From Octopus bimaculoides (lineage: Eukaryota), in contig NC_068985.1 in assembly GCF_001194135.2 (NCBI RefSeq), positions 62,088,788 to 62,129,621 on the forward strand: a stretch of 40,834 bases of DNA. The letters are read 5' to 3'. Under the pieces are notes generated by a model. That model had not been told where the DNA came from and did no database searches. It was given only the letters and a program-made list of their open reading frames with translations. The position numbers were made by a program, and so were the translations under genes. This document shows, in pieces, positions 33,653 through 33,947 of the stretch (position 1 is its first letter; each line of letters begins with the position of its first letter).

Positions 33653-33947
33653 GTCAACTTAATGTGTCAGTCCCATGAAAGGGAATAATATACTGCTATT
33701 TAGAATTATTATATGTTTACAAGAGCTTGACAGGCATCTCCAACTAACAAGCTATGGCTACTCCAGACTGATGACGAGCAAAGACTCAGAAACATGTCTC
33801 TGGCTTAGCTGGGTGGAGGTGCTTGTCTCCCCCTTGTAAACATCAGGACACAGGAAATGTGTCAAGGCCGACAGGAAGTGGTGCTGCTTCCTAGAGGTAA
33901 ATAGTAGTAGTATTATTCCCTTCATGGGACTGTCACATTAATTTGAC
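33653..33947 (+). mobile_element. ~295-bp nested foldback element with a hammerhead at its tip (retrozyme-like or MITE-like)
   Basis: Outer inverted repeat 33653-33702 / 33898-33947; inner stems 33713-33723 / 33833-33843 and 33729-33742 / 33814-33827; side hairpins 33847-33863 and 33873-33892. Confidence 0.72.
33763..33803 (+). ncRNA. Minimal type I hammerhead ribozyme candidate
   Basis: CCAGA-CTGATGA-C-GAG-CAAAGA-CTC-A-GAAA-CAT-GTC^TCTGG: 5-bp stem I, intact CUGAUGA, GAAA and GUC, palindromic helix III ACAUGU; helix II is flanked by a C/A mismatch. Confidence 0.72.

What the first reader, a model, noticed from the sequence alone, without database searches (positions are those of the whole stretch)
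33653..33947. Rod-like ~295-nt foldback with a hammerhead ribozyme at its tip (retrozyme- or viroid-like element)
Seen in sequence: a nearly canonical minimal type I hammerhead (CCAGA/TCTGG stem I, CTGATGA, GAAA, GTC cleavage triplet at 33796-33798, palindromic helix III ACATGT). Its stem I continues outward through nested stems: AGCTA/TAGCT (33750-54 / 33806-10); a 14-bp stem 33729-42 / 33814-27 whose only two non-Watson-Crick pairs are G.U on the plus strand; a perfect 11-bp stem 33713-23 / 33833-43; two side hairpins (GACACA/TGTGTC and AGGAAG/CTTCCT); and a ~50-bp outer stem. Established: minimal type I hammerheads with palindromic helix III occur in Penelope-like elements and in non-coding metazoan retrozymes, which form small circular RNAs and usually cleave as dimers. 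Inference: this is a non-coding, RNA-structured mobile element, possibly a circularly permuted insert of a rod-like circRNA opened opposite the ribozyme and mobilised by the local Penelope or LINE machinery. An alternative is a MITE that captured a ribozyme. Caveat: helix II is flanked by a C/A mismatch (33775/33788), so this copy may be inactive.
Basis: partly seen in the sequence, partly recalled or inferred. Interest (0 to 1): 0.85.

Follow-up and report, generated by a model that had tools for sequence, protein, structure and literature searches.

The report
Hammerhead-tipped hairpin beside Penelope relic
A 295-base non-coding stretch of an octopus-type genome folds into a long hairpin with the full catalytic core of a hammerhead self-cleaving RNA at its tip, next to a decayed Penelope-like retrotransposon, so it is most likely a dead single copy of an already known kind of ribozyme-carrying mobile element.

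Summary
Window 33653-33947 is a strong foldback (RNAfold z -11.4 on +, -10.4 on -). Its 41-nt apex (33763-33803) carries every invariant hammerhead position, helix I, a weak helix II and a 1-bp helix III with a palindromic CAUG loop. Shuffling the 31-nt apex keeps that pattern in only 2 of 3,000,000 trials, so it is not chance.

No covariance model supports it. Rfam gives no hammerhead hit, but Rfam also missed clean Penelope-type hammerheads used as controls. Two models I built from Penelope-lineage hammerheads give it about 5 bits.

Directly downstream, on the same strand, lies a decayed C-terminal third of a Penelope-like element (PLE) ORF. That fragment has its own, different hammerhead-like motif at its 3' end (34913-34958). 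The foldback is therefore not this PLE's terminal repeat.

I found no second copy, tandem array, significant target-site duplication or tRNA head. Cephalopod genomes could not be searched, so copy number, consensus and covariation remain untested.

Best reading: a solitary, probably inactive relic of a hammerhead-bearing, PLE-dependent non-autonomous retroelement (retrozyme-like). Rivals are a snap-back inverted duplication made during PLE insertion, and a TTAA-flanked MITE. It is a known kind of element, of modest interest.

The parts
33653..33947 (+). Whole 295-nt imperfect foldback (42.7% GC), non-coding. Its boundaries are sharp: pairing stops at both ends.
33653..33702 (.). Outer left arm. 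Pairs with 33898-33947: blastn 90% identity over 51 columns, or 80% complementary ungapped. TTAA at 33659-62.
33898..33947 (.). Outer right arm. TTAA at 33938-41.
33713..33742 (.). Inner left arm (11-bp perfect stem plus 14-bp stem). Pairs with 33814-33843.
33814..33843 (.). Inner right arm.
33844..33897 (+). Right-arm-only insert with two side hairpins (GACACA/TGTGTC 33847-63; AGGAAG/CTTCCT 33874-93). The left arm has only about 10 nt at this position (33703-12).
33763..33803 (+). HHR-A, the hammerhead-like apex. Helix I 33763-67/33799-803; C3-A9 CUGAUGA 33768-74; C33775 unpaired or mismatched; helix II GAG/CUC 33776-78/33785-87; loop 2 CAAAGA; extra A33788; G12-A15.1 33789-92; loop 3 CAUG; U16.1 33797; C17 33798. 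Predicted cleavage is between 33798 and 33799.
34019..34924 (+). Degraded C-terminal third of a Penelope-like element ORF. It follows the RT and includes the CCHH linker and a GIY-YIG-like motif at about 34627-34734. It has at least 2 frameshifts and several in-frame stops. Identity to relatives P0001-P0004 is 31-34%.
34913..34958 (+). HHR-B, the PLE fragment's own hammerhead-like motif: GACAC UUGAUGA a GGUUGG aguguaua UCAGCC GAAA cg U U|GUGUU. It is a U3 variant. Its UGAUGA (34919-24) is the ORF's double stop codon.
33430..33560 (.). TG/TA-rich, microsatellite-like tract upstream of the foldback. PLEs are reported to favour microsatellite targets (PMC8557442).
34994..37150 (-). LINE remnant on the minus strand, starting at a (TGTAAATAA)x3 tract (34994-35021). 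It cuts off whatever followed HHR-B.

Best explanation
The 295-nt foldback is a solitary, old and probably inactive copy of a non-coding, hammerhead-bearing retroelement from the Penelope/retrozyme world. It would be a non-autonomous unit copied in trans by a PLE reverse transcriptase.

Proposed working, for an intact copy transcribed on the + strand:
1. The apex adopts a type I hammerhead.
2. Helix III is only A15.1-U16.1 closing a CAUG loop. Two ribozymes therefore pair through ACAUGU to form a 6-bp intermolecular helix III, and cleave after C17 (33798|33799).
3. The long extension of helix I (the rod) holds the resulting 5'-OH and 2',3'-cyclic phosphate ends together. This favours religation to a rod-like circle.
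4. The linear or circular RNA is the template for PLE-type target-primed reverse transcription.

Shown here: the foldback, the complete catalytic core at its apex, its non-randomness, and the PLE context.

Inferred: transcription, dimer cleavage, circle formation, trans-mobilisation, and that other copies exist.

This particular copy is probably dead. Helix II has only 3 Watson-Crick pairs flanked by C33775.A33788. There is no partner ribozyme of its own family nearby; the only other hammerhead-like motif in the window, HHR-B, has a different helix III.
For: - All invariant hammerhead positions are present, in the right order and register.
- Only 2 of 3,000,000 apex shuffles keep the pattern. 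Whole-window shuffles give 0.007-0.027 hits against 1 observed.
- The hammerhead fold is within 3.6 kcal/mol of the MFE.
- The architecture matches published metazoan type I hammerheads that act as dimers: helix I of about 5-6 bp, helix II of about 4 positions, and a 1-bp helix III with a 4-nt palindromic loop. The unpaired base after A9 is typical of PLE hammerheads (PMC4209133, PMC7229834).
- Size (295 nt) and GC (43%) fall within the published range for non-LTR retrozymes (PMC7229834).
- Dispersed monomers, and descent from PLE terminal repeats, are described in bioRxiv 10.64898/2026.07.22.740005.
- A PLE remnant lies 70 nt away on the same strand.
- PLE-type hammerheads exist in cephalopods. 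Three hits in the cuttlefish locus L004 include a clean one at 19473-19522(-) and a U3-A8 covariant downstream of a PLE-like ORF end.
- The three G.U-forming transitions favour the + strand, which is also the more stable fold.
Against: - No covariance model supports it. Rfam gives nothing, although Rfam also missed the control PLE hammerheads. R1 gives 5.4 bits and R2 does not list it at E<=10.
- Helix II is short, with an extra A before G12.
- No second copy, tandem array or tail was found.
- The arms differ mainly by transversions and indels, so there is no sign of selection on RNA pairing. The minus strand folds almost as well.
- The neighbouring PLE has a different hammerhead (HHR-B) and no sequence similarity to the foldback. 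The PLE link is therefore circumstantial.
- The tandem PLE junction in L001 is not a foldback (z -1.35).
Confidence: 0.5

Rival explanations
1. The foldback is a by-product of PLE insertion and not a designed RNA rod. A 5'-truncated 3'-terminal fragment of some other PLE family (hammerhead plus about 150 nt) was copied. The cDNA then snapped back on the hammerhead's helix I hairpin and primed synthesis of an inverted copy of the downstream arm. The hammerhead is real, but the foldback has no RNA function.
For: - PLE insertions often carry an inverted 5'-truncated copy at their 5' side and target microsatellites (PMC8557442, read).
- Hammerheads lie near PLE 3' ends.
- The arms look like decayed DNA duplicates: 92 identical positions, 4 transitions, 7 transversions, large indels.
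- Both strands fold about equally well.
- A TG/TA tract lies upstream.
- This model explains why the one asymmetric segment is exactly the ribozyme core.
Against: - It needs a 44-54-nt deletion in the left arm or an insertion in the right arm.
- The arms are unrelated to the only PLE present.
- No parent PLE family with this hammerhead was found.
- Helix II of HHR-A is much shorter than in the PLE hammerheads seen here.
Confidence: 0.2
2. It is a MITE or foldback DNA transposon, for example piggyBac-type. On this reading the element is 33663-33937 and is flanked by a TTAA duplication. It happens to contain, or once captured, a hammerhead sequence.
For: - It has long terminal inverted repeats and no coding capacity, and is of MITE size.
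- TTAA sits at 33659-62 and 33938-41.
- Both strands fold nearly equally.
- piggyBac, other TIR families and 65 MITE families are reported in Octopus vulgaris (PMC13282606).
Against: - The inverted repeat continues 6 nt beyond each TTAA (GTCAAC / TTTGAC, 5 of 6 complementary). TTAA therefore looks internal.
- There is no direct repeat at the true ends. The best flank repeat, 9/10 at 33617/33988, is reached in 17% of shuffles.
- The TIR does not begin like known piggyBac ends (from my own knowledge).
- No MITE model explains a complete ribozyme core exactly at the axis.
Confidence: 0.15
3. The match is chance. An ordinary inverted repeat has a central spacer that happens to spell the hammerhead core, with no ribozyme ancestry.
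For: - No profile model recognises it.
- Helix II is marginal.
- The descriptor was fitted after the fact, and weak partial matches of 9-14 bits are common in the window.
Against: - Only 2 of 3,000,000 apex shuffles keep the pattern.
- Shuffled windows give 0.007-0.027 hits.
- Helix III is palindromic and there is an unpaired base after A9, neither of which the descriptor required.
- The motif lies in a PLE-bearing neighbourhood on the same strand.
Confidence: 0.07

Closest known systems
Minimal type I hammerheads of Penelope-like elements (in pseudo-LTRs, and dispersed as single motifs); Cervera & de la Pena 2014, PMC4209133
   Same: - Type I topology.
- Helix I of about 5 bp.
- An unpaired base after A9, followed by a G...C pair.
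- A tiny palindromic helix III implying dimer action.
- Occurs as a single dispersed motif next to a truncated PLE.
- Not recognised by standard models.
   Different: - Helix II is 3 bp, against 6-8 bp.
- There is an extra A before G12.
- It is not a copy of the neighbouring PLE's own hammerhead (HHR-B).
- It scores only 5.4 bits with a model of PLE-lineage hammerheads.
- The long foldback was not seen at the one tandem PLE junction I could examine (L001).
Metazoan non-LTR retrozymes: tandem units of about 170-400 bp with a type I hammerhead, expressed as highly self-paired circular RNAs (PMC7229834; bioRxiv 10.64898/2026.07.22.740005)
   Same: - Unit size (295 nt) and low GC.
- Non-coding, with a highly self-paired predicted structure.
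- Weak, dimer-type helix III as in amphibian retrozymes.
- Co-occurrence with PLEs.
- Dispersed monomers are known.
   Different: - No tandem repeat here, and copy number is unknown.
- The unit is permuted so that the ribozyme is central.
- No evidence of RNA or circles.
- The Rfam hammerhead families built largely on such canonical motifs give no hit.
Sm-alpha SINE-like hammerhead elements of Schistosoma (from my own knowledge; cited within PMC4209133)
   Same: - A short dispersed non-coding retroposon carrying a type I hammerhead.
- Loop 2 here (CAAAGA) resembles the CAAAUA loop I recall for that ribozyme. This is a lead, not a test.
   Different: - No pol III boxes or tRNA-like head found.
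- Helix III is weaker.
- The foldback architecture is not a feature of Sm-alpha as far as I know.
MITEs / foldback DNA transposons (piggyBac-type, TTAA)
   Same: - Long inverted terminal repeats.
- Small size and no ORF.
- TTAA near both ends.
   Different: - The inverted repeat runs past the TTAA.
- No significant TSD.
- A complete ribozyme core sits at the axis.
Hammerhead viroids and viroid-like satellite RNAs (Avsunviroidae)
   Same: - Rod-like or branched, highly paired RNA of about 250-400 nt with a hammerhead.
- Dimer-dependent cleavage in some members.
   Different: - Those are RNA replicons of plants with type III hammerheads in both polarities.
- This is a genomic DNA copy in an animal, with a single type I motif on one strand only.

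Membership tests
Hammerhead ribozyme (type I) | Invariant core C3 U4 G5 A6 N7 G8 A9 ... G12 A13 A14 A15.1 ... U16.1 H17, in type I order | tested here: met
   CUGAUGA 33768-74, GAAA 33789-92, U33797, C33798. Only 2 of 3,000,000 apex shuffles keep the pattern.
Hammerhead ribozyme (type I) | Helix I flanking the core and the cleavage site | tested here: met
   CCAGA/UCUGG, 5 bp, continuing outward through the foldback.
Hammerhead ribozyme (type I) | Helix II closed by a 10.1-11.1 pair (usually G-C) directly abutting A9 and G12 | tested here: not met
   C33775.A33788 mismatch. Only GAG/CUC (3 bp) pairs. If C33775 is read as the PLE-type bulge, then G-C closes the helix, but an extra A precedes G12.
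Hammerhead ribozyme (type I) | Match to the curated Rfam hammerhead covariance models | tested here: not met
   No hit at gathering score, nor at E<=10 on 601-nt and 76-nt stretches. The control is weak: Rfam also missed a clean cuttlefish PLE-type hammerhead and the L001 junction motif.
Hammerhead ribozyme (type I) | Self-cleavage at H17 | not testable with these tools
   Needs in vitro transcription of the monomer and dimer.
PLE pseudo-LTR minimal hammerhead | Lies in the terminal repeat of a PLE of the same family, i.e. the same sequence recurs at that PLE's 3' end | tested here: not met
   The adjacent PLE fragment ends in a different motif, HHR-B 34913-58. There is no similarity between the foldback and the PLE 3' region.
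PLE pseudo-LTR minimal hammerhead | Unpaired base between A9 and 10.1; G10.1-C11.1; palindromic 15.2-16.2 / loop 3 (PMC4209133) | tested here: met
   C33775 is unpaired, G33776-C33787 pair, and ACAUGU is palindromic. However, there is an extra A33788.
PLE pseudo-LTR minimal hammerhead | Long helix II (6-8 bp) and similarity to lineage hammerheads | tested here: not met
   Helix II is 3 bp. R1 gives 5.4 bits and skips helix II. R2 does not list the motif at E<=10.
Metazoan non-LTR retrozyme | Head-to-tail tandem repeats, each unit carrying a hammerhead | tested here: not met
   TRF and self-BLAST find a single unit only. Solitary monomers of retrozyme families are, however, reported (bioRxiv 10.64898/2026.07.22.740005).
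Metazoan non-LTR retrozyme | Unit of about 170-400 nt, GC below 45-50%, non-coding, highly self-paired | tested here: met
   295 nt, 42.7% GC, z -11.4, only spurious 54-55 aa ORFs.
Metazoan non-LTR retrozyme | Multicopy family expressed as linear and circular RNA | not testable with these tools
   No cephalopod genome or transcriptome could be searched by DNA. The indirect attempts found nothing.
MITE (TIR DNA transposon derivative) | Terminal inverted repeats | tested here: met
   50-nt arms, about 90% identical with gaps.
MITE (TIR DNA transposon derivative) | Target-site duplication flanking the TIRs | tested here: inconclusive
   There is no direct repeat at 33652/33948. TTAA lies 6 nt inside both ends and could be a TSD only if the outer 6 nt pair by chance. 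The 9/10 flank repeat is not significant.
MITE (TIR DNA transposon derivative) | Many copies with the same ends, and an autonomous partner with matching TIRs | not testable with these tools
   Same limitation as for retrozyme copy number.

The most novel reading that the evidence does not exclude
Cephalopods may harbour a family of rod-like hammerhead circular RNAs (retrozymes) that PLE reverse transcriptase copies once around the circle, starting at the distal loop. Each genomic insert would then be a permuted single unit: a foldback with the ribozyme at its tip instead of a tandem array. That would be a new integration form for retrozymes and the first such family described in cephalopods.
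Probability: 0.15. Interest if true: 0.65.

Novelty: new member of a known kind. Interest (0 to 1): 0.35.

Why it matters
If the family is real and multicopy, it would extend hammerhead-bearing non-autonomous retroelements to cephalopods. I found no paper describing them there; five papers hold both 'hammerhead ribozyme' and 'octopus', and of the four listed none is such a description.

It would also offer a simple structural case: helix I prolonged into a roughly 100-bp rod. That case could be used to test how ribozyme cleavage, end juxtaposition, circularisation and PLE reverse transcription are coupled.

As a single decayed copy it has no obvious consequence for the host. It mainly serves as a marker of past PLE/retrozyme activity.

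The by-product finding also fits the published picture that PLE hammerheads are conserved but highly variable. The neighbouring PLE fragment and its distant relatives each carry a hammerhead-like motif with one variant core base just 3' of the ORF.

Tried and rejected
1. Rfam at three scales gave no hammerhead. Controls show Rfam also misses PLE-type hammerheads, so this negative carries little weight.

2. Searching for other copies led nowhere:
- self-BLAST of the window;
- a concatenated six-frame ORF query against the protein database;
- exact look-up of 10 window ORFs;
- TIR and hammerhead DNA patterns in metagenome and viral contigs;
- BLAST against the fetched loci, including 20 kb each of Octopus bimaculoides and Acanthosepion pharaonis.
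The collections do not allow a DNA search of cephalopod genomes.

3. 'The foldback is the pseudo-LTR of the adjacent PLE' is rejected. That PLE has its own, different hammerhead, and there is no sequence similarity.

4. 'An intrinsic 3'UTR/5'UTR panhandle is a general PLE trait' is not supported by the tandem junction in L001.

5. A C/D-box snoRNA reading (SNORD44 hit, 12.3 bits, E 1.9) is rejected. The hit only reflects UGAUGA. There is no D box before the 3' stem, and the motif is too short.

6. The miRNA-family hits fall in the microsatellite or are far below their thresholds.

7. A tRNA-derived SINE head is rejected: ARAGORN finds none.

8. The TSD candidate TTATGCAGTA/TTATGCATTA is not significant.

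9. Strand choice from G.U pairs (3 on the + strand against 1 A.C) is too weak to count.

Full report
**Observation.** On the + strand it folds to -134.9 kcal/mol; 200 dinucleotide shuffles average -76.0, giving z -11.4. On the - strand it folds to -122.2 kcal/mol, z -10.4. The repeat finder reports 50-nt outer arms (33653-702 / 33898-947) and 30-nt inner arms (33713-42 / 33814-43).

A global alignment of the left arm with the reverse complement of the right arm gives 92 identical positions, 4 transitions, 7 transversions and 58 gap columns. Three of the transitions form G.U on the + strand and one forms A.C. Most of the gap columns come from a 54-nt right-arm insert that holds the two side hairpins.

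**The apex.** Positions 33763-33803 read CCAGA CUGAUGA C GAG CAAAGA CUC A GAAA CAUG U C UCUGG. Every invariant hammerhead position is present in type I order.

**Is it more than chance?** A deliberately loose type I descriptor was used. It allows a bulge or a 10.1/11.1 mismatch, a helix II of at least 3 bp, and a palindromic or hairpin helix III. It finds this site and no other in the window. Dinucleotide-preserving shuffles of the window give 0.007-0.027 hits per window, depending on the helix I length required.

The stronger test is conditional. With the foldback held fixed and only its 31-nt apex shuffled, the core plus helix II pattern recurs in 2 of 3,000,000 trials. Forcing the hammerhead fold costs only 3.6 kcal/mol relative to the MFE. 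I conclude that the motif descends from a real hammerhead.

**Profile methods do not support it.** Rfam gives no hammerhead family at gathering score, nor at E<=10 on a 601-nt stretch or a 76-nt stretch. The only hit there, SNORD44 at 12.3 bits, reflects the UGAUGA string.

This negative is weak. Rfam also fails on a clean cuttlefish PLE-type hammerhead (L004 19473-19522, minus strand) and on the hammerhead-like motif at a tandem PLE junction (L001).

**Context: a Penelope-like element.** From about 34019 to 34924 on the + strand, read through two frameshifts and several stops, lies the C-terminal third of a Penelope-like element ORF. Its best database relatives (31-34% identity) carry the RT YVDD motif upstream and a GIY-YIG domain at the C terminus.

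One relative, contig L001, is a head-to-tail PLE tandem. In its 230-nt junction I found a hammerhead-like motif: UUGAGGA g GACCUC cgaa GAGGUC GAAA guac U U. Equivalent motifs lie roughly 65-120 nt 3' of where the ORF appears to end in two other relatives. Each of the three has one variant core base.

**A second hammerhead in the window.** A covariance model built only from those three motifs (R1) was run over the whole window with filters off. Its top hit is 34911-34960 on the + strand (13.4 bits, E about 0.35): GACAC UUGAUGA a GGUUGG ... UCAGCC GAAA cg U U|GUGUU. This sits exactly at the end of the PLE ORF, and its UGAUGA is the double stop codon. I call this motif HHR-B.

So the neighbouring PLE fragment has its own hammerhead where the literature says it should be (PMC4209133; PMC8557442). 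That hammerhead is unrelated in sequence to the finding's motif, which I call HHR-A. Local alignment of the foldback against the PLE 3' region scores no better than shuffles.

R1 gives HHR-A 5.4 bits. It aligns in the correct register but skips helix II. A broader model, R2, does not list HHR-A at E<=10.

R1 also found three hammerhead-like motifs in a 20-kb Acanthosepion pharaonis locus. One is a U3-A8 covariant downstream of a PLE-like ORF end. PLE-type hammerheads therefore do occur in cephalopods.

**What the foldback is not.**
- It is not the terminal repeat of the adjacent PLE.
- It has no tandem partner, no tRNA-like head and no coding capacity beyond two 54-55 aa ORFs.
- It has no second copy in the window or in any fetched locus.
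- A candidate 10-bp flank repeat (33617 / 33988, 9/10) is matched or beaten in 17% of shuffles.
- TTAA occurs 6 nt inside each end. The inverted repeat continues beyond it, so a piggyBac-type duplication is possible but not favoured.

**Source organism.** The window shares several repeat families at 70-84% identity with an Octopus bimaculoides chromosome locus that is similarly rich in N gaps. The source is probably an octopus.

**Limits.** The decisive test needs copy number, consensus ends and covariation across other genomic copies. It could not be run, because no tool searches cephalopod genomes by DNA. Indirect routes all came back empty:
- a six-frame ORF query;
- exact ORF look-up;
- pattern scans of metagenome and viral contigs.

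**Interpretation.** The best reading (0.5) is a solitary, probably inactive relic of a hammerhead-bearing non-autonomous retroelement of the PLE/retrozyme lineage. Several points fit published metazoan type I hammerheads and non-LTR retrozymes, including dispersed monomers and PLE ancestry (PMC4209133, PMC7229834, PMC7761336, bioRxiv 10.64898/2026.07.22.740005):
- the size (295 nt) and GC content (43%);
- the high degree of self-pairing;
- a helix III that implies action as a dimer;
- the unpaired base after A9.

Mechanistically, the rod would be an extended helix I. After cleavage at 33798|33799 it would keep the two ends together for ligation and for reverse transcription by a PLE enzyme in trans. 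Only the structure and the core are shown here; the rest is inferred.

This copy is probably dead. It has the C33775.A33788 mismatch, which could be a decayed CpG. Helix II has only 3 bp, and there is no partner ribozyme of its own family.

**Rivals.**
- Snap-back inverted duplication made during insertion of another PLE family's 3' end (0.2). This uses the known tendency of PLEs to carry inverted truncated copies (PMC8557442). It explains both the DNA-like decay of the arms and why the ribozyme is the only asymmetric part.
- A TTAA-flanked MITE (0.15). This is plausible because octopus genomes hold piggyBac and MITE families (PMC13282606).
- Pure chance (0.07).

**Novelty.** Hammerheads in and around PLEs, and as dispersed single motifs, are well documented. 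This is a new member of a known kind. The ribozyme-tipped solitary foldback is the only unusual aspect, and it is unverified. Interest: 0.35.

Noticed in passing
window 34913-34958 (+): HHR-B, a second hammerhead-like motif, sits at the very end of the degraded PLE ORF. It is a U3 variant (UUGAUGA) with a 6-bp helix II and an ACGU helix III. Its UGAUGA doubles as the ORF's two stop codons (34919-24). It is the top hit in the window for a model built only from PLE relatives.
   Followed up: partly
L001 1348-1395; L007 1611-1657; L008 1921-1968: Three distant PLE relatives from ENA metagenome contigs each carry a hammerhead-like motif a short distance 3' of where the ORF appears to end. Each has one different variant core base (C3>U, U4>C, A9>G); taken together they point to a CUGAGGA-type core. 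L001 is a true head-to-tail PLE tandem with the motif in the 230-nt junction.
   Followed up: partly
L004 (Acanthosepion pharaonis) 19473-19522(-), 18451-18494(-), 17017-17060(+): Three hammerhead-like motifs lie within 2.5 kb, next to (TA)n tracts. One has a perfect core and a palindromic helix III. One is a U3-A8 covariant downstream of a PLE-like ORF end. One is a canonical-looking CCAGUCUGAUGA... motif with G12>A.
   Followed up: partly
window 33659-62 and 33938-41: TTAA lies 6 nt inside both ends of the foldback. It could be read as a piggyBac-type duplication, but the inverted repeat continues past it (GTCAAC / TTTGAC).
   Followed up: partly
window 33617-26 and 33988-97: Direct repeat TTATGCAGTA / TTATGCATTA, 27 nt before and 41 nt after the foldback. 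It is not significant: 17% of flank shuffles reach 9/10.
   Followed up: yes
window 33806-33816: TAGCTGGGTGG resembles the pol III box A consensus TRGCNNAGTGG with one mismatch. I saw no convincing box B downstream, and ARAGORN finds no tRNA-like fold.
   Followed up: partly
window 1184-4014, 7155-9533, 22291-23473(-), 34994-37150(-): Several degraded LINE copies (endonuclease and RT pieces split by frameshifts). None is intact. The window also has about 3.2 kb of N gaps and many TG/TA, TAT and CAT microsatellites.
   Followed up: no
window 34994-35021: (TGTAAATAA)x3.1 tract, 40 nt after the HHR-B cleavage site. It is either the 3' tail of the minus-strand LINE or the PLE's microsatellite target.
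   Followed up: no
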